A DNA stretch of 61,472 nt, counting the filler, from Sluysia triapertura (Eukaryota), in NCBI GenBank assembly GCA_046118255.1. It is 5 parts of 5 records of this genome, joined end to end, with 100 filler letters (N's around TTAATTAATTAA, not from the genome) between each part and the next. Parts side by side here need not be neighbours in the genome. Positions count along the whole stretch, not along the records: positions 11,469 to 25,401 come from JBJNIA010013757.1; 4 more parts are not named here. One strand, 5' to 3'. The first letter of the stretch is position 1; each line of letters starts with the position of its first letter. Shown here in pieces: positions 2,578 through 44,059 of this stretch. The notes under the pieces were generated by a model that worked only from the letters and a program-made list of their open reading frames with translations, was not told the DNA's origin and did no database searches. The position numbers and the translations under genes were made by a program.

Positions 2578-3631
2578 TCATATAACACGATGCAGAGCAA
2601 AAGGAAAGGTTTCTACGAACATTCGATTCAGCCTGTATATAATTTGTTGTACGAGTAATATTTCGTGCGCACGAATCGTAAACTTCGTCAGTCGCTCCAT
2701 ACTCATAACCAAACTCATTTTGAATTTTGAAAGCATAAGTCTAAGATGAACAAAGTTCACTATCGTTTTCAAACCTAAACTTGTATCTCATTATTCCTAA
2801 GTCATTAGGAGTTTCACAAAGTCTGCAATTAATGTTTGTACACTTTTGGCATATTGTAGAAACTATGTTTTTTGTTTTGAAGAAAAAACACGTTCATAAA
2901 GTTTCTTTACTATTTACTCTATGATCATGAACGTACTTATTTTTTATATCATGAACAAAATCATACTTGTAAACACTATCCTGATCACTACTATGATGAT
3001 CAACACAAACTCCACCATTACTTTCATCATCATCAAAATTATTATCAAGAAAATCATCTTCATCATAGTCATGAGTCTCTTTTTGATCATAATAATAAAT
3101 AAACATAATAAAAGATTTAAAACAATTTATGTTAGATTCAAAATTCAATATTATAAAAACAGTGATGAAAGAAAAAGCGCATCAATTGACTTGTTTTCGT
3201 AACAATTACAATGTTCTCCCGTTTTTATTACGTTTTTTAAATTTGTAATTAAAAGCACATGGTATATCATCGTTTCATATGGATTTTCTTCATGAAATAG
3301 GCTCGAAACATTAATAACAAAACCACGTCTAAATCCCGAACATAAACTCTAGTTGTGCCTTCCATTTAAAAACATCTGAAAAGACAGTGCAAGCACATTA
3401 CTTTCATCTTCAATTCCTATACAATACAATTCAATAGCCAGTTTTGATCTCAAACTGACATCGATTTCTTTCATTGAACCTTAGTTTCATTGGGTTTTTC
3501 TGTTTGAAAATAGCCTTAAGAAATACAATCACATTTTTAAACTGACAAACTTGTTCGATAAAATGGTTTTGTAAACTAAACTCTAGTATAATATTCATCT
3601 CTTCATAAAAAGCCATCTCGTGATTTTTCAT
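2578..3631 (-). pseudogene. Possible divergent DEDDh-like family member (heavily decayed)
   Basis: Fragments LALSFQMF (cf. VALDCEMV / MFMAFQYA), FKTKNIVS (cf. LYNKILVS) and TIRAHEILLV (cf. ICRARETLRL) occur in the expected order across several broken frames. Confidence 0.3.
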
Positions 3632-11468: not shown

Positions 11469-11543
<75 letters not shown>

Positions 11544-11548
11544 CATTA
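11469..11548. repeat. (ATT)n microsatellite at gap edge
   Basis: Direct reading. Confidence 0.95.
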
Positions 11549-12464
11549 CATGATTTATTATTAAAAAATTTAGAATTATTCCGTATTTAATTTTCTTTTT
11601 ATTTATTTATTCATGTTTATAAGTAAATAATTGTTTGTGAAATTTGTTTTTCAAATTTACATCAACTTATGTACAAAAATCAATATATAACAGGTATTCA
11701 TAAATAAACATCTTTTTCTTTTCATATATAAATATTAGGATGCTTTTAGAATTATTCATATTTTGTGCATAAACGTGAATTAAAAATTTGATTTTTTTCA
11801 GTTTTACATTATTAGTTTAAATATAAAGATTTATTATTAACAATATTTTATTTCATTGATATTTTAATTAGATTGTATCATTGCAATTTGTATAACTAAA
11901 TTTAATATAAACTTGCAAAATGTACTAATTATACAGTGTTTATTTAAAAATACCTAAAATTGTTTGCTAATACTTTTTAATATTTTTGAACATATTAAAT
12001 AAATATTCGAAATGTAAAGAAAGATGTAAGAATCAATTTTATGGAAAATGATATTAGTATTAAATTGTTGAGTAATGAATTTTTTGATTCGAGCAAAAAA
12101 CACAATTGAACTGTTGAAAGATGTTTAGTACGAGATTTTCGATAAATTGACATCATAATAGGTCTGGAATGACAACAGAAATTTGTAATAATAAATATTA
12201 TTTTACTGATAATGATGTCAATCACTTTAAGCAATTTTGTTTACATAAAACGAAAGTAAAACCGAACTGATATAGTCATGAGGATTTTACTTCAATTTAT
12301 AAAGGTTCTTGTAGTATAAAGTTAATGCGCGCTCGATATATATATTTACAAAGTTTATATATTTACAAAAACTTTAAAAAAGATAAATTTAAGCAATCAT
12401 TTAGGATGCTTAAATCATTGAAGCTCTATTAAAATTATAATTAAATCTAACGTGTACGAAATCA

Positions 12465-12514
12465 AAATTCATATAAGGCTTGTAAATTCATATAAGGCTT
12501 GTAAATTCGTATAA
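12465..12514 (+). repeat. Short tandem repeat, 19-bp unit
   Basis: AAATTCATATAAGGCTTGT repeated ~2.6 times. Confidence 0.8.
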
Positions 12515-12914
12515 ATTCTACCTGAAACAAAATTAATGTACAAAGGTATTGATTTGTATAGTACTTTATATTGAATCTAAAACATTTCTACATAACATAA
12601 AATAGCGCATATAGTTTAAATCATTTAATCTATTATTCTGAAATGCATTTTAAAATATTCTCTTGTACTTTCACTCTTATCGAAATGCCTTTTATTAATG
12701 TGACTATAAATTCATTTACTGTCTTTTAAAAAATACATTAACTTAATTATTAAATCTTTTAAAACGTCCTGAGTTAGCATTAAATTATAAGAATGCATAC
12801 TGTCTCTCAAAATGTACATTATAATAGTCACTAAAATTTTAAAATGTCTTGATTCTACTTAAAAATATATTATTATAATCACTAAATCTTATAAAATGTC
12901 TCTTGCAAGTTTTT

Positions 12915-13830
12915 CTTACTTAAAGACTTAACTTACAAAATATTTAAGGAGTCGGTTAGCCTAATATATACGATTTATACCACTATTGGAGACGTATTAT
13001 TAGGATTTAATATTTATACTTAATAGAGATTCTCAAACTTACACTTAGTTTAAAACTTTCGTTTACAGACTGTTAGTCAACTTATTAATTAATTTATATT
13101 TTATAATTACTCAACCCGTATTAAGGTGCTGCTTTAAGATTTGATAATATTTTAATAAATTACGCAACCATTTATATGGTGTTGCTTTGAGAAATTTGAG
13201 GTTAAAAAGAAATTACCCAACCAAAAACGTAATTCACTAAGGTTTATTAAACAAATACTTAAGTTAATAGATTACAATTGAAGGTTATAATAGTGATAGT
13301 GATTTTAAATATACGATTCAACCTTAGTTGATCGTAGTATAAATTTAATGTAAAGTTACGCAACTCATTAAGATGTTGCACAAAAATGAAAAAATATTTT
13401 TAGTATATTTTTAGGTGAATCTAAAATTTATAAAAAACTAAATTAATTGTGCATGGACAAGAATGGTAAAATAATTTTTCTGAAAAATTTCCAAGTTATT
13501 CTTCTTTATTGTCAAAAAATTATATCCAAGTTTTCTTAAACATCCACTTTGGAAAATTAATTCATTAATGCAAAATTCTTTATTAATAATTTTATGAAAA
13601 TTTAATTTTTTAAATTTAATAATTTAATAATTAATAAATAATTTTATATTTTAATTTTCTAAATTTTATATTTTATTCTTAAATTTTATTTAATTAAATA
13701 ATTTTGTGATATTTTAATTATAATAGGAATAATATTTAAAATTTATAATATTTACAAAATAATAAAATGATAACGCGATAAAAATATGACACTTTATAAA
13801 ATACAAATAACTTTGACACTATCTTTTGTT
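12915..13830 (+). repeat. Structured interspersed repeat family A, copy 1 (head motif + bulged-hairpin array)
   Basis: GGAGTCGGTTAGCCTAATA...TATTAGG head at 12948-13004; hairpins at 13111, 13164 and 13359; CAACCTTAGTTG at ~13320. Alignable by eye to 19865-20940 and 60725-61350. Confidence 0.8.
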
Positions 13831-14898
13831 TTACACTAGATTCAATAAGATTTATTATTAGTGAAATGGTTCATATTAAACTCAAAATTCTTTACGTTGA
13901 GGTGCGAAATAAATAACTTAAATGAATTATCATTAAAATCTATTTTAATGATTTTAACTTCTGAACATGTTTCATGCTACATGAAACATATAACTTGCAT
14001 TGCTTATCAGATACGTCATAAAAATAAGTAGTAGTTTGTACAGTATAATTTTGATGACAATGTGAAACAAAGTTTTTCTTTGCTTTTGAAATAATTTAGG
14101 CAGTTCTGTATTTGGTCTATCAGTTTTGGTTTTAAAAGTACCATTGAACAGCTAACCTCGCACTAGATTTTTCGATTCAAATAAATTCACAAAAATTAAG
14201 TTATAATAATGATAAATGTGCATAAAATTTCATAATTATTAAAGTTGTAATATTAGTTGCCAATGAATTTCGAAGAGTTACTTGAAATTTGTTGGCTTCC
14301 TGTTAATAATATTTATTTTGGCAGTGATGATAAGGATGACAGTAATATGATGATAATACAAATAATGGTAATAATAAGGATACGTATAATAGTGAAATTA
14401 ATGAACCATATGTAGTGTTTCAACAACGCACTATAATCCCATTGTCGTTCCTACACATAAATTGACACAACTCATAATTTTACATATCACTACTTCAACT
14501 TACGCAATACAAAAATCCTACACTAAATATATTTAAATTATTAACCGTTAAATTTACCAGCAATTATATTATATCAAATGAATGTTATACATTATTAATT
14601 CAGTGTACTCGACATAATTCAATCCACAAAATCTCGTAATAAAATTAAATTAATTTGATAAATTATAGTAATCAAATACGTAATATTTTGCTTGTGCTGT
14701 ATCAGTCCTCATCATCGCCATTATCAATTTTTTTATTTAATTATATATCACCTGGACTCCGGGCTCAATGTGTTAAATGAATAACTTTTCGGTAAATTTA
14801 TCTTTTTTGTCAAAAATGGTTTCTTTTATTAAAATTATGTTTTAATTAAAATTTACCTATTAAATAAAAATTATATTTTAATTAAAAATTAAAAAAAG

Positions 14899-15815
14899 AT
14901 GAAATCTTTCTTAGAATTAACGTTGACAGAGATGAAACATTTCTTTGCGAATATGTTTTTACAGACGAGACTTTTCCCACAATGGAATCCACACTGATTC
15001 AAAATATTTTTAGAGACAGTAATTTTGAAAATAGTTCTCAACCAGTTAGACTAATTGTTTTGTAAAACTGTTCATTTTATTTGTTATGCGTTGAGTAATC
15101 ATGTTATACGCAGCAAATTGTTTAATTTGCAAGATGACTTAATAATTGAAAATATTATTATGAACGTTCTCAAAATGTATTATTTAATGAATTTCCTTGT
15201 TTCTTTTTTCGAAAGATTCAGATAAGGAGTTGTAGAGTAAAATGTTTAAAGTCCGTTGCACATTTGATGACGATTGTGAATCGTTCGACACTAAGTACTT
15301 CAACTTTATCGTCTTTAAACAATAAAACACAAAGACTACTTAAAATTTGAAATTTGAATTCACGTGAATTAAACGCTAAAAGAGTACATGCTTGTGAAGT
15401 CTTGAAAGAAAAGACTTGTATATTTATGCAACAAACTTTTGAACGGTCAATGACGTCAGTTAGATAATACTATATGATTATGTTTTATTTAGAATTGTTT
15501 AAGTTAACAAGTTTTAACATAGATGCTTTAGATAGTATCGATGAGTTGGTAACTATCTTATTTATGAGACAGGTGGATCGCTCGGAGAATATATTGGAAC
15601 CTGTATGCCGTGTTGCGCGAGACGTTGCCGATTTCCGAGGCATGGCCTTGCAAATTGTACATGGTCTTTTATATTTTCAAATGGACATTTTTTGTTATTT
15701 TTTCTATCATTTTCGTTCTATTGCTGTTATTCTTACAATTCGCATAATATATGGAGATTTTTATATTTTTCATATTCAGTTCATATTATCAAGGAATTTA
15801 AGTTCACCTTTATAA
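14899..15815 (+). pseudogene. Divergent DEDDh-like pseudo-exonuclease family member (broken)
   Basis: TDETFPTM (cf. EENEFPTT in the 43.9 kb copy), RVHACEVLKEKTCIF (R-x6-L-x2-K as in RPQIIGILRNK and RDFRLAALYNK), and PVCRVARDVADFR; multiple stops and frameshifts. Confidence 0.4.
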
Positions 15816-16849
15816 TGATAAATATTTTAATACTTCTTAAGTTTAATAATTCTTATTATAAATTAATGTTTCGTATCAAAATTTATGAAATACTAAACTA
15901 TAAACAACTAAATAATAAAACATTAAATATTACAATATTAAATCATATCATAACAATAATATTAAACATGACTTCTTTCAAACCACACGCACATTTGGCA
16001 TTGAACAATGGATAAATAAAATTCCATTTATACATCCTCGAGAATATTCCATAGCTATATTAGATATATTAGTTGCAAAAGTTCAGTTTAAAAATAAAAT
16101 CAAGCGCCAAAGAAAAGGATTGTCAATCATATTTATGTAATTTTATGATGCATTTAATATTTTGCATAAATTTTAGTTTTTGTGAAATAGATGAAATAGT
16201 ATTTACTTTGAACTTTCTGCTTATGTAAAGAATTAATCTTAGGCCATAGCCTACTTTTTATTTTTATTATAAAACAGTTAGAACGGATCATAAGTCCCAT
16301 TTTGTAAATCATTTTCACTTAATTGTCATAAACACTTCATAAATTTAAACATTTTATTACAAATTTTTCAATTAATAAAGCCTCAACCATCACAATCACA
16401 CCAAATAAATTTTTCTTTAATCATATACCAACAAAATTGTTAATTAATTAAACAAATTAATTATGTAATTTTGCATTATGATTAATAATAAATATATGTT
16501 GGAATCGAGATCGAAAATCGAGAGATACAAAGAAAAACTATACAAGATCTAGATATCAGAAGAGCAATCGAGAAATAAACAATTTTTTCAAACAAATTCG
16601 TTCCATGCATATGTAACTTTTCATTACATAGGTTTCATAATTCTAACCTTAAACGGTAGAACATTATCCTATACCGTAAACGGATAGGTTAAAATCATTT
16701 TTAAAATTCACATTTTTTCGTATCTAAACAGAAAATTTAAGATACTAAAATGCTTATTTTTATTATTAGTATTAAGTTAATTTGTAATCGACTGATTTAT
16801 TTGTATATAATAAAAGTTTTAAGATACATATTGTTTTTAATTAATTTTA

Positions 16850-17110
16850 AAATACAGTTCGTATAAATCAAACCGTACAAAGGCTGGTTTAATCACTAAA
16901 TTAGAGTGTAATTTCGAGACTAAAAAGGAAAGATAATTTCACGTTTATAATACACTTAATATCAACCTGTAAGGAGATTAATTGTTTTGCTTATAAGTGA
17001 TTACTAATTCTCTTGCCTTAAAGACTAATTTGACCGTCGTCAGCTAGTGACATAAATCGTCTCTAAGTAGCCGAGCTCGCCTCCAGAAGATAATCTTTTT
17101 GTAATTAGGT
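16850..17110 (-). repeat. Structured interspersed repeat family A, divergent inverted copy
   Basis: Minus-strand head GGAGGCGAGCTCGGCTACTTAGAGACGATTTATGTCACTAGCTGACGACG...TTAG, and hairpins ACCAG-CC-TTTGTAC-GG-T-TTGAT (~16866-16888) and ATCT-CC-TTACA-GG-T-TGAT (~16962-16980). Confidence 0.6.
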
Positions 17111-17449
17111 TCTTTTTAGGACGGAACACTTGCACATATATAATATATAATAAACGTATATTAAAATGTATTTAATATAAAATTCTATTCAACTATTCGA
17201 AAAAGTACGGGTTACAGACAATGATGGACTATGAAATTTTTAATAAGTGTCTTGTTCTAGTAATGTGCCACTGCGACTGACATAAAAAATAATGTTAATT
17301 ACATGTTTTATTTTATACAAAAAACAATATTATATTAATAAGGATAGAACAGACAATACAATAGAATAAAATAAAGAAAAAACATGCCATTTGTAAAAAA
17401 TAAATAAATAAATAAATATTTACAACTTATTCCAGAAGATACTGCATTT

Positions 17450-17710
17450 CCTTCCTGCTTCACTTTTGTGATCTTGCAGATTTATCCGCAGCCGAGCGAT
17501 GACTTTTCAAAAAAGATTTAACATATGAGTTAGGGTTAAATTCTTCCAAAAATTTCCTATTTAAGCAGATCGTCATAAAATCCGAAACATGTTTAACACT
17601 GAGAGAAGATCTTTTCATTGTATCGTTGTAACGATATCATTCATCGAACTAAAAGCTTGTTCAGAATCAGTGCTGCTAACTGCGATTGTTTCCATTATGA
17701 ATAAATCTGG
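17450..17710 (-). mobile_element. hAT transposase C-terminal dimerisation domain remnant
   Basis: METIAVSSTDSEQAFSSMNDIVT..(fs)KRSSLSVKHVSDFMTICLN..LEEFNPNSYVKSFLKSHRSAAD. Confidence 0.8.
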
Positions 17711-19340
17711 TATAAAAATCATTAACATGAAGAAGTAGAAAAAGGAATCGAAGAGATGAAGATGTAAACATATAGAACCTCCTGAATGCTTTATAAATTA
17801 CCAAATAACTTTAGAATCTTAATAAAACCTTTAAACATAAAATAAGATTAAGTCTAAAAATGGATTAATTAATTAAAGTTTAATTAACTTAATTAAGAAA
17901 GAGTACGTTTTTGTGAATAACTCGTGGATGCGAAATGCATTGTTGAATTTGAAACTGTGTATTGAAAAGACCTTTCGATGAAGTTATGGTTTACCCGAGT
18001 TCATGCAGGGAAAACCTTAATGTTGAACAAAGTCAAATTTTAATTAATTCTTAATTAATTTTTTAATTAATTTTTTATACGTAGAATGATGAAAATATAA
18101 TGAATTACATATGAGATGATTTCTATGAGAGAGAAGAATCTGTAAGTGAGTTCGAAATGTTTATAAAATGGTTCGTTTGAGAATAAGAACCTTTAAACAT
18201 TTTTCATTAGAAAATTGGGTGTGAAAATCAAAAATTAATCAAATCCTAAAAAGTGAAATTAAATTCATTATTTTTATGTATGTTAACAATATTGTTGATT
18301 GTAATATTTAATGTGAGAAGTGATTTAAGTAAAAATATATTGAGTAAAGTAAAAGGAAATGATGGTTGATAATAAATTAGATTTTTATGTTTTGTACCTA
18401 ATGATAGACCGTAACATGTATTTTTCAAAGTTGTTATTGTCGGGTTGATTCTCAGTTAGGTTTGGATGATTTATATGAGAAAGTGTTTGGTTGTGGAGGG
18501 GAAATTATTGGATAATGAGTGTATAAAATAAAAATTTCCAAATATTTACAAAACAATTACACAATTACACCACAAGAAAGCAGGGCTTATTGAGAAAATC
18601 CATGCTTTGGGTGAGGATTTCATATATTATTTGATTATTTTAATATTATTATTTTTGATCATTATTTTGATTATTATTATTGTCATTTGATTTTTTGTGG
18701 GACTACTCTTAAATCTATCAGAGACTCCCTTTTTAATTTATTTTTAAAATATTAAATTTATTTTAAAGTGATTTTAATATCATTTGGTAAGAGACTTTCT
18801 TTGCAATTTATTTTTTTGTGTTTGTTTCGCCACTCCTGGTTTCTTCATATAGACTGTCATATTCTTGTTACTATTATAAACGTTATTGTAGTTTTTGTCT
18901 TTTTGTTGTTGTGCAGCAAAGACTTATAACAGTAATTTTTTTGTTGTAATCATTAAATTATTGAATTTTTATTGTTTATTTTATTTAAAAAACTTAATCC
19001 TTGAGTTGAATAAATAACATCGTCAAAATAAGGAAATTTGTGATAATTTAATATTGAATTTAGTGATTAATTATTGAGGTTTTGTTAATTAGGTTAATCG
19101 ATATTAATATGCTATTATTATTAAGTACAAAGACTCAACATTGACATCGATTCTTATATAAACTAACATCAATACAATCATAGGCTCCATTTTACATTCG
19201 CCATATTGAAAATTTTTAAAATTATCTTTAGCAGCTATAAGTTTGTCAAGTCATTTATTAAACATTTACATCTGATCACATCATCTGCAGTCCAACATGA
19301 TGTAATAACTTTAAAATATTTTATTTACTGTTTATTTTTT

Positions 19341-19520
19341 GAGCACCCTTTGATAATGGTCTTACTCAATTAAGGGCCAATTCATAGGTGTCAGCGAAAG
19401 ATATTAATGAAAACTTTAGAGGTCAAAGAAAATTAAGTTGTGCGTGAGTTAAAATCCGCTATTTAGCGAGATTAGTTTTTATAATAAATGTTAAGTGTGA
19501 TCCGATTTAGAAGGATCTTA
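19341..19520 (+). repeat. Structured interspersed repeat family B
   Basis: TGGTCTTACTCAATTAAGGGCCAATTCATAGGTGTCAGCG...ATCCGCTATTTAGCGAGAT...GATCC; homologous to 36655-36815. Confidence 0.75.
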
Positions 19521-19864
19521 ATTCTAATAATGTTAATTTATTATAAGTGATAATAATAATTATTATTCTATGTCGTGTATTTTACAAATTTTCTAAAATT
19601 ATATAATTTATTTAGCTATGAAATGAATAAAGAAGTTTTAGGATTTTTTTCTAAAAGAATCAAAATGTTCTAACACAAAAATTTAATCCTAAATCAGATA
19701 TACAATTGTGTTAATATTTATTAATTAAGGAAAACTGATTCAATAAGTAAGATTTCGTGGATAATGTCAGTTTACTTTAATATAAAAATTTATAAAAATA
19801 TATAAAAACTTATATAAGTTTAATAGTTACAATTTGTGGATAATGTTAGTTCACTTTGCAAGTG

Positions 19865-20940
19865 TTTTATCTAAAACTTACTTACACTTACAAAATACCT
19901 GATGAGTCGGTTCGCCTAATAGACACGTTTTATACCACCTTTGGAGACTTGTTATTAGGATTTTTAATTTAAAAATATATTAACTCTTGCACTACGTATA
20001 CTTAATCGACTTACAAACTTTATCACTATAACTGCTCTTTATTAATTTTAAATTATGTTACTATACATTCACCAACCTTCTTAAGGTCTAGTTCAAAGAA
20101 ATTATAAACTTCACAAGCCTTTTTAAGGTCTTGTATAGAAAACTAATTAATAAATTTAGTTAATTACTCTACCCTTTTTGAAGTGTAGATCAAAAACTAT
20201 TATAATATTTTAGAGATTAAACTAGCCGTATTAAGGTCTAATGGTAAAAATGATTTAATAATAACAAATTAAACAAGCTTATTAAGGTATATTACAAAAC
20301 TTGTACAAATTTTATATAAAAAGAGTTATAATAAATATAATGATTTTAATAGTACAACTTCAGTTGACTGCTTGAAGAATTTTAAAAATTAGTTTCGCAA
20401 ACCTTGCAAAAAAATAATAAAATAAATTTATGTAGATGCTAAAATTTCCTTATAAGGTGAATTTAAAAAACCTTAACAAGTAAAAAATTACTCCAACATG
20501 GACATAATTAACTGGAACTATAAAATTTTCTCCTGGAATACTAAACTTTTATTGTGTTTTACCTAAAATTTCGTTCTGATATTCTGTTAAAAATTACTTG
20601 CTTTTATATTAACTTTGTGGAAGCCATTTTAGTTCTTAATCTAATTAATTTAAACAAAAATTACCTAAAATATATTTTAAAATATTTTAAAATTTATTAA
20701 ATTAGAATTTTATTTTATTTTATTACAATTTAAATTTTAAAATTTTTATTTTATTTTATTTTACTATAATTTATATTCTTAAACTTTTATTTTATTTTGT
20801 TTTATTGAATTTAATATAATAGAAATAATTATTTGAAGAAATTAAAAACACATAAAATATCAAATAATAAATATTAAGTAATAAAATTTACATATCATTT
20901 ACACAATATTAATATATACACCTTGACAAATACTTTCCCT
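19865..20940 (+). repeat. Structured interspersed repeat family A, copy 2 (most complete array)
   Basis: Head at 19904-19959; 22-nt hairpins at 20071, 20113, 20168, 20221 and 20273; CAACTTCAGTTG at ~20355. Confidence 0.8.
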
Positions 20941-21360
20941 TTCTGGAAGATTCGTCCACGAATCAACGTTAAATGTCAATAAATATTATTGTGAATGATC
21001 ACATTATTATAATAGTAAAGTTATTTAGTCTAAATCGGCAGGATCTTCGTCGTCGTTCAGTAAGTAATCAAATCGGGTCAGTAGGTGAATTTGCGAGAAA
21101 GTGGTGTTGACTGAGAAAAGTGTTGTTGCGCTGTAATTGATTACCTCTGGACGTCGGTTTTTGATTTCGGCTGTTGGTTGATTTCGTTTATTGGTTGATT
21201 TGTGTGTAGTGGCTGTTGAGTTTGATTTCGTGGTTGTACGTGCCGATGTTGTATGTGCAGTGGTTATTGTAACCGATTTATCGATTGTCGGCTCAAACCA
21301 GATGAAGGACCAGTAGAAAAAAGGAAGGAAATATAAGTTTTAGTTTCTTAAAATGGGAAA

Positions 21361-22302
21361 TTAGCTGAGAAGAGGTGTTAGGACAGGTGAAAAGAGTACT
21401 GAAGGAGGATTATTACATCTAGTAACAAATTGTAAATCGCGTTCTCTAATATAGTCGAGCAGGGTCACCAACTCCGTGGCCATCTGCCGACAAATAAACA
21501 TCGAGCAGATGGAGAAGATTAGCCGCAGTGTTTCGCGCGCCCTACAAATTACGTCATCAATAAAGAAAGGAACCAAATTATGGTTCGACAAATTTATAAT
21601 TCCCCTCAACAGCTCAAAGCGAATATCTAAGGCTTCAATAAGAAATTGTGGGTTTAGCGCTACTAAAATCTTATTGCGCAAAATCCCGATGATTTGAGGG
21701 CGGACTTCGTCGATGTCCTTAGCCTGTCTAAAATCGACGTCCGTAACCATCTGGATGTTTCGGCGGAAGTTTTGAATACAACACCGAGGTTTAATATGGG
21801 CCTCAGTGTGAAAATGTCGATTATAAGAGTTACAAGGCACACAGATTATTTGCGGCTTGTTTAAGAAATTTGTGGCATATTGGAAAGCCATAAACATGAG
21901 TCGATCCTCATCATATGCAAAAAGGGTTGGAACGTGGGTATAAGACGCTCCACTTTTCCATCGATTCAGGTTGTCAACATCCTCGGTAAATGGGAACAAA
22001 AAGAAGGGCAATATAAGTCGGAAACTCAAGAGCTTCCACCGTGATGTTACAACCGTTAGTCAACTCGGAAAGATGGAGAGTTGACAAATCCTCTATGCGC
22101 AATAAGAATGGAACTCGAACACTATATACATTGTATTAAAAGTGTCGGGCACATTGGGAAGGGTACGCAAGGAGACAAAAGGTTGTTCGCGAGTTAGTGA
22201 AAAAACGTGGGTCGCCAAGTTGTCTGTAAGCTCAGACAGTGGTGAAAGAAGTGGGAAAAAAGGCAGGGTTAGCGTTATCAGAACAAAACGTTCTATCGCC
22301 AT
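21361..22302 (-). pseudogene. DEDDh (REX4/ISG20-like) exonuclease-like ORF with catalytic residues lost; TE accessory ORF candidate
   Basis: ORFs 22093..22302 and 21361..22029 are in the same frame, separated by two stops. CNSY..HIKPRCCIQNFRRNI..DF..AKDIDEVRPQIIGILRNKILVAL..LIEAL and ICRARETLRL resemble REX4 segments (VNY..YVKP..V.DYRT.VSGI..; A..F..V...V..IL.G.ILVGH..D..L; S.EDARA.M.L). GC is visibly higher than the flanks. Confidence 0.6.
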
Positions 22303-22334
22303 ATAAAAAGCCTGTATTTATGCCTGTATTTTTC

Positions 22335-22785
22335 CTCTACCACGTATTGAACAATTCTTACACCAATTTTTAATGTCATCTTCAATATATTCCCAATAGT
22401 ATTTATCTTTTATGCTAGATAGTATTTTTCTCTTAGACAGGTGTCCACCTAACTGTCCGTCATGAAACTGTATTAATATTGGTATTACCAATAATTTGGG
22501 AACAACTTTTGAGTTTCTGAATCTGAGTATTCCATCTGTAATAGCTAATTTCTTTGCTTGACTTTCAATTTATGTTCCTTTCGCTCTCCTTATCTTCTAT
22601 TTGATGTTTAATGATTTCTTTGGTCTCCCGTACTTTCCCTGATATTGACATGATTTGTATAAAATTAATATTTCCTTTATCATCTGCATTGGTTAAGCGT
22701 GAACCTAGTTTATAAATAACTTCTAAATTAAATTCTACTAATTTGTTAAACCACCTATTTAACCTACTGACCTCATCCCTATAAT
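22335..22785 (-). mobile_element. Ty3/Gypsy pol remnant: RNase H C-terminus and integrase HHCC zinc-binding domain
   Basis: Minus-strand translation gives DEVSRLNRWFNKLVEFNLEVIYKLGSRLTNAD (Ty3 RNase H end) and VPKLLVIPILIQFHDGQLGGHLSKRKILSSIKDKYYWEYIEDDIKNWCKNCS (integrase H2C2). Confidence 0.85.
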
Positions 22786-23844
22786 AGTTTTATTTTGATA
22801 TTTTAAGCATTAAAATTATTGATGTATTAAATTTAAATATTAAAATTATTAATGTATTTATTAAAAATATTAATTTTTAGTGTATTTATGTATTAAAAAT
22901 TATTAAATTTAAAAAATATAATAATTAATTTAAAAAATATTATTGTTTTAATTATTAAACTTATTATTTTATTTATAAAACTACTAAAAATGGTATTTAG
23001 AAACACTATAAATAGTGAATCGCTAAACTTACATATAATTTCGAAGTTTGAAAATTATTGATTTATTGACATTAACAGTCTATTTATAGTTGGATAATAG
23101 AAAATTATTTCTTTAAAAACATTATTAATATTCGAAACAATTATTAATATTTCGGAACAAACTAATTAATTTGATATTAACAATTTATTTATAACTGAAG
23201 AAAAGAAGATTATTTTTGGAAAAATTTATTGATATTTGGAAAAATTAATTTATATTAATCGTTAGTTTTATGATTTTTTAAGAGTAGTTAATTTATAACT
23301 ATATAAAATAAACGCAAACTGAATTTATAAATTAAAAGTACATTTAATACAACAAAAAATTATTTATTAACATTTAATTCACAACATATTAATTATAAAT
23401 TAATAACGTTTAATATTTATTCCTATAATATAGACGAATATTTTAATTTTTGACATTTGACATATTATATTAATACTTTTCAATATTTATAAACGAACTT
23501 TAAATTTTTGCACATAATTTTTAATTATGTTTTACACTTTCTAAGCTTATTTGACAATTAACAATTTCTATTTATTAATTGTGTAAGTGTTTTAACTTTT
23601 ATATACTTGTTTTTTAATAAAACAAGTATAATATTCGAATTTGTGTTTTTTAATAATTAGTAATATTTTAAGTAAAATAAATTTGAATTGATACGGATAA
23701 TTTTTAATATTGACTATTTTCCAAATTATAATAAAATCTTAATTGAGGAAAGCCAATAAGTATCTGAATCTAAGAAACAGGTAGCATCAAAATTAAATAT
23801 CAACATTAGCTTCCAGTTCTTATCTTTTCTTTCTTAAAAGCTGC

Positions 23845-23895
23845 GAATCTATGTTCTGGCCCTTCATTGAGTAAGTCTAGTATCATAGAGAACTT
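23845..23895 (-). repeat. Family B core hairpin, inverted
   Basis: Minus strand reads TCTATGATACTAGACTTACTCAATGAAGGGCCAGAACATAGA. Confidence 0.6.
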
Positions 23896-25401
23896 ACTTT
23901 AAGGATAAGGCATTTAATCCAAAATAAAAATCTTAATCACATCTTAATCTAAAATCTCCACATCAGTATAAGTCCCCATGATATCCTTTAGATTTTAATT
24001 CCTTGACAAACCTATTAATTGTCAAATTCTTTTGAATTTTTGACTTACAGAGGATTTCATATATGATAACTTGTTGAAAATAAACGAAATATACACAATC
24101 TAGTATAAACGATATTGACTGATATGTATAAAATGACATTAAATTATTTAATACATCTGATGTATTATTCCCGTCAAAATTTCAAAATCTCCAAATGGGT
24201 TAAACTTTATTTATTTAAAGTTTTGTAAAATTTTGATGTTTAATTAGTTTTACTATATTTTAATTTATATTGATCTTTTAAACTTTATGCTTACAATTAT
24301 TAATTATAAAATGGTTCTGTATTATCGTGAGTTTTTGATCCGTTTATTGTTTGTTTACCTTATGATTTCAGTCTTTTAATTCCCTTAAAATCCTATTCAG
24401 AATTTGTAGACAATGACTATTTATTTTTCGTATCATATAATTTTTACTATAACTAACATGGCTCTAATTCAATATTGCACCATCTAACCAATTCAATTCC
24501 ATAATAACATGTATTAGAATTTAAAATGTGAATGTTTTCTTTAAATACTAGTTAATTAAATTATATCATTTTGGCAATGTAATTTGACTGTATTATAATT
24601 TTAACTGCGCACTTTAATTACATCAACTTTGCTATTTAATATTTGTGTTAGATTGTCACCACAAATCACAAAAAACGCATTAAAAATTATGAGATTATTT
24701 AAAAATGAATTAAAAATCAATTTAGAAATCTTCAAAATTACTTTAAAAAAATTTATTTTCCAAAAAAGAAAAGAAAATTTCTAAGAAATAAAATTAGCTT
24801 CTAAAAATAGAATAGAAGCTTCTAGAATGTTCTAGAACATTCAATCGATTTTCGCTGGCTGATTATTAGTTATATAATGAAAATCGCCATTTTATCGTCG
24901 CCATTTTGAAAAAACAATTTTTATCAATTCCCTTCGGTTTACTGCGTGATTTGAGAAATTCTAAAATCTTAGTAATCGTTCCTCGATTGGAGATTATTCA
25001 CAGGACAATATCAATCCATTTTTGTTAATTCATATATTTGTAAGGGCGATTTCAACTTTCGAAGTTGAAATCACAAAAAAAAGGTAAATTCTATATTAAA
25101 TTGTAAATTTTTTTAAGTACCAGATATATTAAGGGGTAAAATCCACTCAAAATATATTAGCACTAGATTAAACGCTCACGGAGCTTTAATCCCTAAGTTA
25201 ATTATTATTTCTTTCTCGATCTATTAATTTAGTTGTTTGTAAGAGTGTATATAAAATTTATATTTTTCAAAAATAATTTAAATTTTAAAAATATTATAAA
25301 ATTTAGATAAATGTAAAAAATTAGTTAATTAATTAATTTAAATAAATTTTATTATTATTATATTTAAAAAATTATTAAAAGAGAAACTTCCAGAAGGAAG
25401 T

Positions 25402-36654: not shown

Positions 36655-36815
36655 GAATCCTCTATGATATTGGACTTACACATTTAAGGTCCAATTCATA
36701 GATGTCAGCGTAAGAATATGATCGCACGTTTTACGGAGGTCAAAAAGTAAAATGTACTACTTGCAGTGATTTAGATCCGCTATATAGCGAGGTTATTTTA
36801 TATGATCCGGTTTTA
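36655..36815 (+). repeat. Structured interspersed repeat family B
   Basis: TCTATGATATTGGACTTACACATTTAAGGTCCAATTCATAGATGTCAGCG...ATCCGCTATATAGCGAGGT...GATCC. Confidence 0.75.
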
Positions 36816-38339: not shown

Positions 38340-38900
38340 CTCTTGAGTTTTACAATCACACATTTTCACGCAAATCATTAGAACCTCCTTTGAGAATTAG
38401 ATCAGCAACAACGGTTTTATTAAGGTTCTAAAGTTATTTAATACTTTATAAGATACTCAGGTGTTCTAGATGCTTTCACGTTCACCACTCTGGTTCATTT
38501 TTATACTATATGTTAATTGTTAATAAATCATTGACTTAATAAAGTTACTCAAAGGTCTTAAATATTCTTAAAGGTTGATGAGGTCTCAAATGGTCTCAGG
38601 GTTCACAAGTTCAAGGATATATCAACACTATGGAGTTTTCGTTGTATTGTTGTGTCGTGATGGGTTGAGAGTCGTGTGTTGAAAAGCACTTTATGTGTCT
38701 AGATAGATCAAGAGTCTTATTCGGTTTATATTTATTAACAAGCCTTATGTCGTAGTTGTTCGCATTGTGATTAGCATTAAAGGGATTTGTGGCTGCTATG
38801 GTTACTCTAATGCCTAAAGTTGGTTCCTGATAATAAGATGGCCTATCGAAAAAATTTATCGGATTTTTGTTATTACTTATGGTCGAGTAACAATAAGGTT
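38340..38900 (-). pseudogene. Possible divergent DEDDh-like family member, truncated by assembly gap
   Basis: Open frame from the gap edge reads ...LGIRVTIAATNPF...IRLVNKYKPNKTLDLSRHIK..., similar to FMAFQYATNF...CVPCNSYNRHFHTEAHIKP of the 21.4 kb copy; stops follow downstream. Confidence 0.3.
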
Positions 38901-42814: not shown

Positions 42815-42845
42815 ACGTACTAGTCCTACAAGTAAGGGCTAGCCG
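42815..42845 (+). repeat. Family B-like core hairpin
   Basis: CTAGTC-CTA-CAAG-TAA-G-GGCTAG. Confidence 0.4.
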
Positions 42846-43267: not shown

Positions 43268-44059
43268 TTAAAGTTTTATCGACATACGGAAAAATGAAGG
43301 ATCCCTAGACACAATAACGTCATACGAAGCTACTAAATCCTTCACCATTTGTTGACATGTCACCTGTGGAGGTAAATGAGATAACAATTTCATCCCTTTC
43401 CTAGCTTTAGAAATCGGGTTTAACGAAGTTTGAACTATTAATACATATCAAATTAATAATCCCCTTCAACCAGCCGTATGGAATATGCAGTGTCTTAATT
43501 ATTATTTCTGGAAAAGGCGACACTAGAATCTTATTATAGAGAGCAGCTAACCTAAAGTCGCGAATCTGAGACGAATCTTTGCTTCCTTGACATGCTCTTC
43601 TTTCATTCAATGATCGAATGAATTCGAATTCTTGGTCGTAATAATGCTTTTCCATGGAATAGTTTCATGATGCTTATCACCAAAATCCAATGCAAGTTGC
43701 TCTGAGACAAAGATATGTTCCCCTTTATGTGTCATAAATGTTTGTATGTCGTGCGGGTATGTAACTTTCTTGCCAATTGTATATATTAATTTCGTCCCTA
43801 TGATACATAAAGGGCACTTCTTGTAGTCCAGTGGTTTTTCGGATTTTGCCAATAACACTGCGAATGTGGTTGGAAATTCATTTTCCTCGATCTGTATGAT
43901 GAAGTTAAGTGTTATTTTAGTGATGAATAATGAAGAAAAGCCCTGGATTCGAGATAATATAAGAATCCCAGCTATAATAAGTGTAATTTTCAAGGTACCT
44001 CTTGCTGCTGCGATTATAACGGGTTTATCGTTTATGGAAAAGGCCTTCAAAGAATTCAC
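43268..44059 (-). pseudogene. Second DEDDh-like pseudo-exonuclease ORF (frameshifted), homolog of 21361..22302
   Basis: SKDSSQIRDFRLAALYNKILVSPFPEIIIKTLHIPYGWLKGIINL aligns with AKDIDEVRPQIIGILRNKILVALNPQFLIEALDIRFELLRGIINL. After a frameshift, ISKARKGMKLLSHLPPQVTCQQMVKDLVASYDVIVSRDPSF aligns with ICRARETLRLIFSICSMFICRQMATELVTLLDYIRERDLQF. Confidence 0.65.

What the first reader, a model, noticed from the sequence alone, without database searches (positions are those of the whole stretch)
19341..22785. Candidate system: retroelement-borne DEDDh pseudo-nuclease coupled to downstream structured RNA elements
Seen: reading the minus strand, Gypsy RNase H/integrase (22785-22335) is followed immediately by an exonuclease-like ORF (22302-21361), then hairpin-array family A (20940-19865), then structured family B (19520-19341). 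The same relative geometry (structured element 3' of the ORF, same relative orientation) recurs at 14899-15815 (+) with A inverted at 16850-17110, at 43268-44059 (-) with B-like at 42815, at 38340-38900 (-) with B at 36655, and possibly at 2578-3631 (-) with A-like at 530-1060. Established: DEDD-exonuclease extra ORFs have been reported in some invertebrate LTR retrotransposons (e.g. bdelloid rotifers). DEDD-fold proteins such as Egalitarian and Exuperantia act as RNA-binding factors, and Egalitarian binds localisation stem-loops. Inference: this element family may encode a non-catalytic RNA-binding protein recognising its own multivalent hairpin array (Rev/RRE-like export, localisation, packaging or anti-silencing).
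Basis: partly seen in the sequence, partly recalled or inferred. Interest (0 to 1): 0.82.

Follow-up and report, generated by a model that had tools for sequence, protein, structure and literature searches.

The report
Dead-exonuclease gene in Gypsy retrotransposon relic
This is the broken 3' end of a Gypsy-type jumping gene that carries an unusual extra gene, a catalytically dead copy of a REX4/ISG20-type RNA exonuclease; the "hairpin array" behind it is simply the element's long terminal repeat, not a special RNA partner.

Summary
Most of the sequence observation holds; the coupled protein-RNA system does not. On the minus strand an integrase zinc-finger fragment (Pfam E 1e-14) is followed by a 314-codon frame (22302-21361) with two in-frame stops.

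- **The ORF.** Its core is homologous to REX4/ISG20-type DEDDh exonucleases (hhalign 95.6%, E 1e-8). By alignment all five catalytic positions are replaced. Exo I and Exo II are replaced in the same way in its only close relative, P0001 (27% identity), found among 1.8 billion representative proteins.
- **Family A.** It is the element's 3' LTR (20928-19857). It runs TGTCAAGG...ACTTGCA and sits directly after a polypurine tract. Two more copies lie in the piece, one of them a solo LTR with a 5-bp target-site duplication.
- **P0001.** It shows the same layout of ORF, spacer, polypurine tract and TGT.
- **RNA structure.** Neither A, B nor the spacers fold better than shuffled sequence (z about -0.6 to 0), and Rfam finds nothing.
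- **Family B.** It lies outside the LTR, in flanking DNA.
- **The claimed second ORF.** 14899-15815 is not a detectable paralogue; it merely lies upstream of the solo LTR.

Verdict: a dead, truncated Ty3/Gypsy relic with an apparently undescribed pseudo-DEDDh ORF3. That is a new variant of the known exonuclease-ORF3 theme. There is no evidence for a cognate hairpin RNA.

The parts
22568..22789 (-). Putative tail of the pol RNase H domain, 5'-truncated. AT-rich low-complexity DNA lies upstream. It is one frameshift away from the integrase piece.
   Evidence: Motif read directly from the translation (RLNRWFNKLVEFNLEVIYKLGSRLTNAD). Pfam gave no hit, so this rests on my own knowledge of the Ty3/Gypsy motif.
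22321..22569 (-). Integrase N-terminal H2C2 zinc-finger fragment. The rve core and the C-terminus are missing.
   Evidence: PF17921 Integrase_H2C2, E 1.4e-14, profile positions 1-52 of 59.
21361..22302 (-). ORF3-like frame for a REX4/ISG20-like pseudo-exonuclease. It has in-frame stops at 22095-22093 (TAG) and 22062-22060 (TGA). The uninterrupted part is 21364-22059 (232 codons) and the terminal TAA is at 21363-21361.
   Evidence: ESM features point to RNase_T clusters at 0.91. P0001 matches at E 1.8e-9 and REX4-like P0002 at E 7e-4. The profile hits the PolC exonuclease domain 2p1j at E 0.001. hhalign against REX4 gives 95.6%. By alignment the catalytic columns read A58, Q60, L140, D168, R173. 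Foldseek top hits are ISG20L2 and ISG20.
20945..21360 (-). Non-coding spacer between ORF3 and the polypurine tract. It is GC-rich in its first ~330 nt (GC 42% over 21028-21339) and becomes AT-rich near the polypurine tract. It holds a 17-nt tandem repeat at 21161-21201.
   Evidence: Folding z is -0.07. No Pfam hit for its open frame.
20933..20944 (-). Polypurine tract AGAAAGGGAAAG, four bases upstream of the LTR start.
   Evidence: Read from the sequence. L001 has a parallel tract, GAGAAAAAGGGGAGA, followed by TATGTAAG.
19857..20928 (-). Four short palindromic subrepeats lie between 20289 and 20071, and a conserved block with a 13-bp hairpin lies at about 19975-19885.
   Evidence: Homology to the A2 copy, E 2e-38. 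The shared homology of all three copies ends at ACTTGCA. Subrepeat statistics; hairpin with one compensatory pair.
12904..13818 (-). Second LTR copy (A2). It is preceded by a purine-rich tract (13832-13819) and about 60 nt of homology upstream of that tract. No ORF3 is detectable upstream.
15787..17134 (+). Third LTR copy (A3), a solo LTR in the opposite orientation, flanked by the 5-bp target-site duplication CATAT (15782-15786 and 17135-17139).
   Evidence: Colinear matches to A1 and A2; termini and duplication.
19341..19520 (-). An adjoining stretch, 19299-19387, has a partial inverted copy at 23849-23943.
   Evidence: (pair I6). Folding z is -0.59. No Rfam hit.

Best explanation
The locus is a dead, 5'-truncated and internally deleted remnant of a Ty3/Gypsy LTR retrotransposon. 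On the minus strand it reads: RNase H tail, integrase zinc finger, deletion, ORF3, spacer, polypurine tract, 3' LTR.

ORF3 descends from a REX4/ISG20-type DEDDh 3'-5' exonuclease. By alignment it has lost all five catalytic residues: Exo I DxE is now AxQ, the Exo II Asp is Leu, and the Exo III His and Asp are Asp and Arg. Exo I and Exo II are replaced in the same way in its only close relative. That argues for a protein kept for a non-catalytic role rather than random decay.

Inferred mechanism, not shown: in intact elements the ORF3 product is translated from the element's RNA. It acts as a nuclease-dead binder of single-stranded RNA or DNA 3' ends. It could chaperone or shield the element's RNA or cDNA, or compete with host REX4/ISG20-type exonucleases.

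In this window the copy is non-functional, with two stops and no gag, RT or integrase core. 'Family A' is the element's LTR. Its subrepeats and U5-proximal hairpin are ordinary LTR features. 'Family B' is unrelated flank.
For: Element anatomy:
- Integrase_H2C2, E 1.4e-14.
- Polypurine tract followed by TGTCAAGG at 20944-20921, and the LTR end ACTTGCA at 19863-19857.
- All three A copies lose similarity directly after ACTTGCA.
- The solo LTR A3 has the 5-bp duplication CATAT. The chance of such a match is about 0.004 at this base composition, by my estimate.
- The A1/A2 homology has E 2e-38.

ORF homology:
- RNase_T clusters score 0.91, and 71 of 100 hits share that family set.
- phmmer over 1.84 billion representatives finds only P0001 (E 1.8e-9) and a REX4-like protein (E 7e-4).
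- The ORF+P0001 profile against PDB hits the PolC exonuclease domain at E 0.001, across Exo II.
- hhalign against 21 REX4-family sequences gives 95.6%, E 1e-8.
- Catalytic columns are read from alignment A5.
- The AF2 core has pLDDT 86-96, and Foldseek ranks ISG20L2, ISG20, PolC exonuclease, SDN1 and 3'hExo first.

Independent layout: in L001 the intact 365-aa P0001 ORF is followed by a 317-nt spacer, the polypurine tract GAGAAAAAGGGGAGA and TATGTAAG. This resembles the window's tract and LTR start.
Against: - Only one ORF copy exists in the piece and only one homologue is known.
- The protein upstream of P0001 in L001 could not be identified as pol.
- In the window the integrase core is missing, and GC jumps from about 31% to 42-43% at the integrase/ORF junction. 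The ORF block could therefore have been joined to the Gypsy fragment secondarily.
- A2, which also carries the polypurine-tract region, has no detectable ORF3 upstream.
- Pfam itself gives no hit for the ORF.
- The good AF2 model used an alignment containing REX4 proteins, so the fold match is not independent of the sequence homology.
- The Exo I and Exo III residue assignments rest on a MAFFT alignment outside the hhalign-supported core.
- The proposed function is inference only.
Confidence: 0.68

Rival explanations
1. Chance or secondary juxtaposition. The GC-richer 1.3-kb ORF block is a fragment of something else, such as a processed pseudogene of a divergent host REX4-like gene or a piece of another mobile element. 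It landed in, or was recombined next to, an old Gypsy remnant. On this reading it is not an accessory gene of the element.
For: There is an abrupt GC change at about 22320, and the integrase is cut right after its zinc finger. No ORF lies next to LTR copies A2 and A3. The protein upstream in L001 is unidentified.
Against: The order is colinear and on one strand: pol, ORF, polypurine tract, LTR. P0001 has the same arrangement of ORF, ~320-nt spacer, polypurine tract and TGT, with a similar tract and LTR start, in a different assembly. The family is nearly absent from 1.8 billion representative proteins. That fits a rare TE gene better than a conserved host gene.
Confidence: 0.2
2. The pseudo-nuclease specifically recognises a multivalent hairpin array in A and/or the structured element B on the element's own RNA, in a Rev/RRE-like way for export, packaging or localisation.
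For: Short palindromic subrepeats are enriched in the LTR. One conserved 13-bp hairpin carries a single compensatory pair between A1 and A2. From my own knowledge, nuclease-dead DEDD proteins such as Exuperantia, Egalitarian, Maelstrom and EXD1 bind RNA; PMC5408684 mentions the last two.
Against: Nothing folds beyond shuffles in A, B or the spacers. Rfam has no family match. B lies outside the LTR and so outside the transcript. A is the LTR, so its co-orientation with the ORF is structural and not informative. Palindromic subrepeats in an LTR are equally well explained as DNA binding sites. Only two or three diverged copies are available, too few for a covariation test.
Confidence: 0.07
3. The frame is not a gene remnant at all: an open frame arising by chance in a GC-richer patch.
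For: No Pfam hit, two in-frame stops, and a first AF2 model with pLDDT 37.
Against: A 232-codon stop-free stretch in a genome of about 23% GC. Significant homology to P0001 (E 1.8e-9) and to the REX4 family (hhalign 95.6%) in this frame.
Confidence: 0.03

Closest known systems
DEDDy exonuclease ORF3 of bdelloid rotifer Juno and Vesta LTR retrotransposons (Rodriguez et al. 2017, PMC5408684)
   Same: An extra ORF of the DnaQ/DEDD exonuclease superfamily in the ORF3 position of an LTR retrotransposon, between pol and the 3' LTR. It has no transmembrane or coiled-coil env features. Its function is unknown.
   Different: The rotifer ORFs are RNase D-like DEDDy with catalytic residues essentially intact (DEED). 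The ORF here is of the DEDDh REX4/ISG20 type. Its best matches are ISG20L2, ISG20 and the PolC exonuclease domain. By alignment all five catalytic positions are replaced.
REX4 / ISG20 / ISG20L2 cellular DEDDh RNA exonucleases (Pfam RNase_T, PF00929)
   Same: The core from beta2 through Exo II to the 'RD' strand is homologous (hhalign 95.6%). The model superposes on ISG20 and ISG20L2.
   Different: No catalytic D, E, D, H or D. About 25 residues before Exo III are deleted. The N-terminal region is unrelated. The ORF fails Pfam's own threshold. It is carried by a retroelement, not a host gene.
Nuclease-dead DEDD-fold RNA-binding proteins (Exuperantia, Egalitarian, Maelstrom, EXD1)
   Same: An exonuclease fold kept without catalytic residues. 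This is a functional analogy, from my own knowledge and from the remarks in PMC5408684.
   Different: No detectable sequence relationship was found here. Those are host proteins with defined partners, and RNA binding by this ORF is untested.

Membership tests
Ty3/Gypsy LTR retrotransposon | Long terminal repeats with TG...CA ends and short terminal inverted repeats | tested here: met
   The ends are TGTCAAGG...ACTTGCA. Three copies share them, and similarity stops right after CA.
Ty3/Gypsy LTR retrotransposon | Target-site duplication of 4-6 bp | tested here: met
   Solo LTR A3 is flanked by CATAT on both sides. This cannot be tested for A1 or A2 because their 5' ends are absent.
Ty3/Gypsy LTR retrotransposon | Polypurine tract immediately upstream of the 3' LTR | tested here: met
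   AGAAAGGGAAAG at 20944-20933. A degenerate tract lies upstream of A2.
Ty3/Gypsy LTR retrotransposon | pol with the order RT, RNase H, integrase, and a Gypsy-type H2C2 integrase finger | tested here: inconclusive
   Only the integrase H2C2 finger is confirmed (E 1.4e-14). The RNase H tail is recognised by eye only. RT, protease, gag and the integrase core are absent from the piece.
Ty3/Gypsy LTR retrotransposon | 5' LTR and primer-binding site | tested here: not met
   No A-type LTR lies upstream of 22789 in the piece. The copy is truncated. This speaks to the state of this copy, not to the family.
DEDDh exonuclease (RNase_T PF00929, REX4/ISG20 branch) | Significant match to the family profile | tested here: inconclusive
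   Pfam hmmscan gives no hit at E<=1. hhalign against a REX4 alignment gives 95.6%, E 1e-8, over 78 columns. phmmer to a REX4-like protein gives E 7e-4.
DEDDh exonuclease (RNase_T PF00929, REX4/ISG20 branch) | DnaQ-like fold | tested here: met
   The AF2 model built with an MSA containing REX4 proteins has pLDDT 72 overall and 86-96 in the core. Foldseek top hits are ISG20L2 and ISG20, E 7e-6. This is not independent of the MSA. The model built on the shallow three-sequence alignment (ORF, P0001 and one REX4-like protein) failed (pLDDT 37).
DEDDh exonuclease (RNase_T PF00929, REX4/ISG20 branch) | Catalytic D, E, D, D and H residues in Exo I, II and III | tested here: not met
   The columns read A58, Q60, L140, D168 (in place of His) and R173 (in place of Asp). 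P0001 has A, Q and I at Exo I and II. The ORF is therefore a pseudo-enzyme, not a working member.
Bdelloid-type DEDDy ORF3 | RNase D-like DEDDy domain with intact catalytic residues | tested here: not met
   The best matches are DEDDh enzymes: ISG20, REX4, the PolC exonuclease domain and the epsilon subunit. The catalytic residues are lost. Only the ORF3 position is shared.
Known structured RNA family (Rfam) or thermodynamically stable RNA element for A and B | Match to a covariance model, or folding energy beyond shuffles, or covariation | tested here: not met
   No Rfam match at E<=1. Folding z is -0.58 and -0.59. Sliding windows equal the controls. There is one compensatory pair in one hairpin between two copies, too few sequences for a test.

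The most novel reading that the evidence does not exclude
A lineage of Ty3/Gypsy retrotransposons has captured a REX4/ISG20-type exonuclease. It maintains the gene as a catalytically dead ORF3, with the substitutions AxQ at Exo I and a hydrophobic residue at Exo II shared by two members only 27% identical. The protein would serve as an RNA/cDNA 3'-end binder or as a decoy against host 3'-5' exonuclease restriction. This would be an accessory-gene type not yet described for LTR retroelements.
Probability: 0.3. Interest if true: 0.6.

Novelty: new variant of a known kind. Interest (0 to 1): 0.42.

Why it matters
Extra ORFs in LTR retrotransposons show how retroelements acquire host functions on the way to virus-like lifestyles. 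So far the only exonuclease-type ORF3 on record in the searched literature is the catalytically intact DEDDy type of bdelloid rotifers.

A second, independent capture would be informative. It is of a different branch (DEDDh, REX4/ISG20-like) and is kept in nuclease-dead form. It would suggest that the fold's nucleic-acid-binding surface, rather than its catalysis, is what retroelements exploit. It would also give a natural candidate for an anti-exonuclease or RNA-handling factor.

The specific copy in this window is a dead relic. The proposed protein-hairpin system has no support, which limits the immediate value.

Tried and rejected
- **Second ORF copy at 14899-15815 (+).** tblastn, Smith-Waterman on six frames scoring below the shuffled null, a profile hmmsearch on all open segments and sensitive blastn gave nothing. 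Pfam on its segments also gave nothing.
- **A1 as the 5' LTR of a downstream element ending at A2.** Rejected. No TGG-type primer-binding site follows A1, identity is only about 60%, and no pol remnants lie between the two copies.
- **A 5' LTR at 24008, where TGTCAAGG also occurs.** There is no colinear homology.
- **The word-index protein search.** It gave no relative of the ORF or of P0001.
- **Locus scans of metagenome and viral contigs.** None found.
- **Exact-protein look-ups for window ORFs.** Not on record.
- **ESM atlas and Pfam on the protein upstream of P0001.** Uninformative.
- **AF2 on the shallow three-sequence alignment (ORF, P0001 and one REX4-like protein).** pLDDT 37, unusable.
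- **Read laying.** Disclosure: two local scripts read the whole piece, including these places, as a local target for an hmmsearch or a regular expression.
- **My impression of a hAT-like motif at about 17620-17700 (-).** Pfam did not support it.
- **Complex prediction.** Not used, because no protein-protein claim is made.
Full report
**Setting.** The piece 11469-25401 is extremely AT-rich, about 23% GC. One GC-richer island of about 40% lies at roughly 20960-22500. Apart from this island there are almost no long open frames.

**Observation: the coding parts.** Read on the minus strand, 22321-22569 encodes an integrase H2C2 zinc finger (PF17921, E 1.4e-14). Upstream, one frameshift away, 22568-22789 carries a motif (RLNRWFNKLVEFNLEVIYKLGSRLTNAD). 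From my own knowledge I recognise it as the end of a Ty3/Gypsy RNase H domain; Pfam did not score it. The integrase stops right after the finger, and no rve core follows.

Eighteen bases later an ATG (22302) opens a frame that runs to a TAA at 21363-21361. It is interrupted by TAG (22095-22093) and TGA (22062-22060). Its clean part is 232 codons, 21364-22059.

**What the ORF is.** The first searches were blank or weak:
- Pfam and the word-index search gave nothing.
- phmmer against PDB gave only a weak hit to the PolC exonuclease domain 2p1j (E 0.16).

Four further lines then converge:
- Language-model features place the ORF among RNase_T (PF00929) clusters, with score 0.91 and 71 of 100 hits sharing that family set.
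- An exhaustive phmmer over 1.84 billion representative proteins returns just two proteins. P0001 is 365 aa, E 1.8e-9, 27% identity, with no Pfam domain. P0002 has E 7e-4 and is a REX4-like RNase_T protein.
- A two-sequence profile of the ORF and P0001 raises the PolC exonuclease hit to E 0.001, aligned across the Exo II motif.
- hhalign of that profile against 21 REX4-family sequences gives 95.6% probability, E 1e-8, over ORF residues 77-154.

AF2 on the shallow three-sequence alignment (ORF, P0001, P0002) failed (pLDDT 37). With the REX4 sequences added, the core reached pLDDT 86-96. Foldseek then ranked ISG20L2, ISG20, the PolC exonuclease domain, SDN1, 3'hExo and the epsilon subunit first (E 7e-6 to 1e-3). 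This fold result is not independent of the alignment used.

In the family alignment the near-invariant catalytic columns are all replaced in the ORF:

| Motif | REX4 residue | ORF residue |
|---|---|---|
| Exo I | D | A58 |
| Exo I | E | Q60 |
| Exo II | H | L135 |
| Exo II | D | L140 |
| 'RD' strand | D | G153 |
| Exo III | H | D168 |
| Exo III | D | R173 |

P0001 shares A-x-Q at Exo I and has P...I at Exo II. 'Exonuclease-like' and 'pseudo-nuclease' are therefore both supported. The type is DEDDh (REX4/ISG20), not DEDDy. The Exo I and Exo III assignments lie outside the hhalign-supported core and rest on MAFFT.

**What family A is.**
- The A region has a 1-kb direct copy at about 12830-13810 (60% identity, E 2e-38). 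It also has a colinear inverted copy at about 15760-17175.
- Aligning the three copies shows that similarity ends directly after a shared ...ACTTGCA. All copies start with T(G/A)TCAA(G/A)G.
- A1 is therefore 20928-19857 on the minus strand, 1072 nt. It has TG...CA ends and short terminal inverted repeats.
- It is preceded by the polypurine tract AGAAAGGGAAAG (20944-20933).
- A2 (13818-12904) is preceded by a degenerate purine tract and about 60 nt of homology upstream of that tract.
- A3 (15787-17134, plus strand) is flanked on both sides by CATAT, a 5-bp target-site duplication. I estimate the chance of such a match at about 0.004 at this base composition.

These are the defining marks of an LTR.

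**Independent support for ORF3 status.** P0001 is encoded on a 1964-bp Logan contig (L001, run SRR22824324). After its stop come a 317-nt spacer with 64-nt tandem repeats, the polypurine run GAGAAAAAGGGGAGA, and then TATGTAAG at the contig end. This compares with AGAAAGGGAAAG followed by TATTTGTCAAGG in the window.

An upstream ORF ends 155 nt before P0001. Its 117-residue tail could not be identified. So the layout from the ORF to the LTR start recurs in a second, distant element, but the link to pol is shown only in the window.

**RNA structure claims.**
- Rfam finds nothing at E<=1.
- The A core (19865-20300) has MFE z = -0.58 and B has z = -0.59. The ORF-to-LTR spacers of the window and of L001 have z of about 0.
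- In sliding 60-nt windows the LTR has 2 of 38 windows with z<-2. Control flanks have 4 of 78 and 12 of 113.
- What is real is an 18-20-nt imperfectly palindromic subrepeat, with 5 hits against 0.16 expected. There is also a conserved block near the LTR 3' end, with a 13-bp hairpin that carries one compensatory pair between A1 and A2.
- Both are ordinary for LTRs, as U3 repeat motifs and R/U5 stem-loops. This last point is inference.
- B lies 337-516 nt beyond the LTR end, hence outside the element and its transcript. An adjoining stretch has one partial inverted copy at 23849-23943 (66% over 95 nt).

**The claimed recurrence.** The stretch 14899-15815 (+) shows no similarity to the ORF by tblastn, Smith-Waterman against a shuffled null, profile search or sensitive blastn. 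It has no Pfam domain. The A copy downstream of it is the solo LTR with its own target-site duplication, so the stretch is target flank. A2 also lacks a detectable ORF upstream. Of the three A copies in the piece, only one is next to the ORF.

**Interpretation.** The simplest reading is a dead remnant of a Ty3/Gypsy element. It is 5'-truncated at 22789 and internally deleted between the integrase finger and ORF3. It retains ORF3, the spacer, the polypurine tract and the 3' LTR.

The GC jump at the integrase/ORF junction (31% to 42-43%) and the missing integrase core leave room for a secondary juxtaposition, which I put at about 0.2. Replacement of the Exo I and Exo II catalytic residues in two members only 27% identical argues that the family is a maintained pseudo-enzyme. 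A role as a nuclease-dead RNA/cDNA end binder, or as a decoy against host REX4/ISG20-type exonucleases, is my inference and is untested.

**Comparison with the literature.** Rodriguez et al. 2017 (PMC5408684) describe DEDDy, RNase D-like ORF3s with intact catalytic residues in the bdelloid elements Juno and Vesta. They note that nuclease-dead DEDD proteins (Maelstrom, EXD1) bind RNA. I found no paper describing a DEDDh ORF3, though the library is incomplete. The finding is therefore a new variant of a known kind.

**Limits.**
- The source genome could not be searched.
Two local scripts read the whole piece only as a local target.
- Run search shows one likely source run and one run of another organism holding 6% of the words. 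Neither is RNA.
Stops were read as X in local scripts only.

Noticed in passing
window 15782-17139: A solo LTR of the same family (A3, plus strand, 15787-17134) flanked by the 5-bp target-site duplication CATAT. It shows that the LTR family was mobile and later lost internal parts by LTR-LTR recombination.
   Followed up: yes
window 19299-19387 and 23849-23943: A pair of inverted partial repeats, about 95 nt at 66% identity (40-nt core at 80%), brackets the whole retroelement remnant at a distance of 4.5 kb.
   Followed up: partly
window 19746-19778, 19825-19857, 24395-24427: 33-nt direct repeats (AGTWASAWTTYGTGGATAATGTYAGTTYACTTT on the plus strand). Two of them lie 79 nt apart and directly abut the LTR end at 19857. 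A weaker third copy lies 4.6 kb away. They may be a satellite-like target sequence.
   Followed up: no
window 22318-22345: At the junction between the integrase fragment and ORF3, the 8-mer ATACAGGC occurs twice, 12 nt apart (AAAATACAGGCATAAATACAGGCTTT). This may be a footprint of the deletion or recombination that joined the two parts.
   Followed up: no
window 15468-16012: A small GC-richer patch (up to 41% GC at 15565-15744) has open frames of 115 and 156 codons on the plus strand, just upstream of the solo LTR. There is no Pfam hit and no similarity to the ORF3 family; its origin is unknown.
   Followed up: partly
window 12465-12514: A 19-nt tandem repeat, AAATTCATATAAGGCTTGT, in 2.6 copies at 96% matches. 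It contains the AAGGCTTGT core of the LTR subrepeat and lies in the opposite orientation to the neighbouring LTR copy A2.
   Followed up: no
L001 1642-1790: The spacer between the P0001 ORF and the polypurine tract holds 2.1 copies of a 64-nt tandem repeat at 90% matches. The window's spacer has an unrelated 17-nt repeat at 21161-21201. Neither folds better than shuffles.
   Followed up: partly
P0002-P0010: The only non-family hit of the ORF is a small unnamed clade of REX4-like proteins, known only from short Logan/ENA contigs. Its nearest named relatives are an aphid REX4-like protein (34%) and a ciliate ISG20-like protein (36%). It is a possible pointer to the source of the captured gene.
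   Followed up: no
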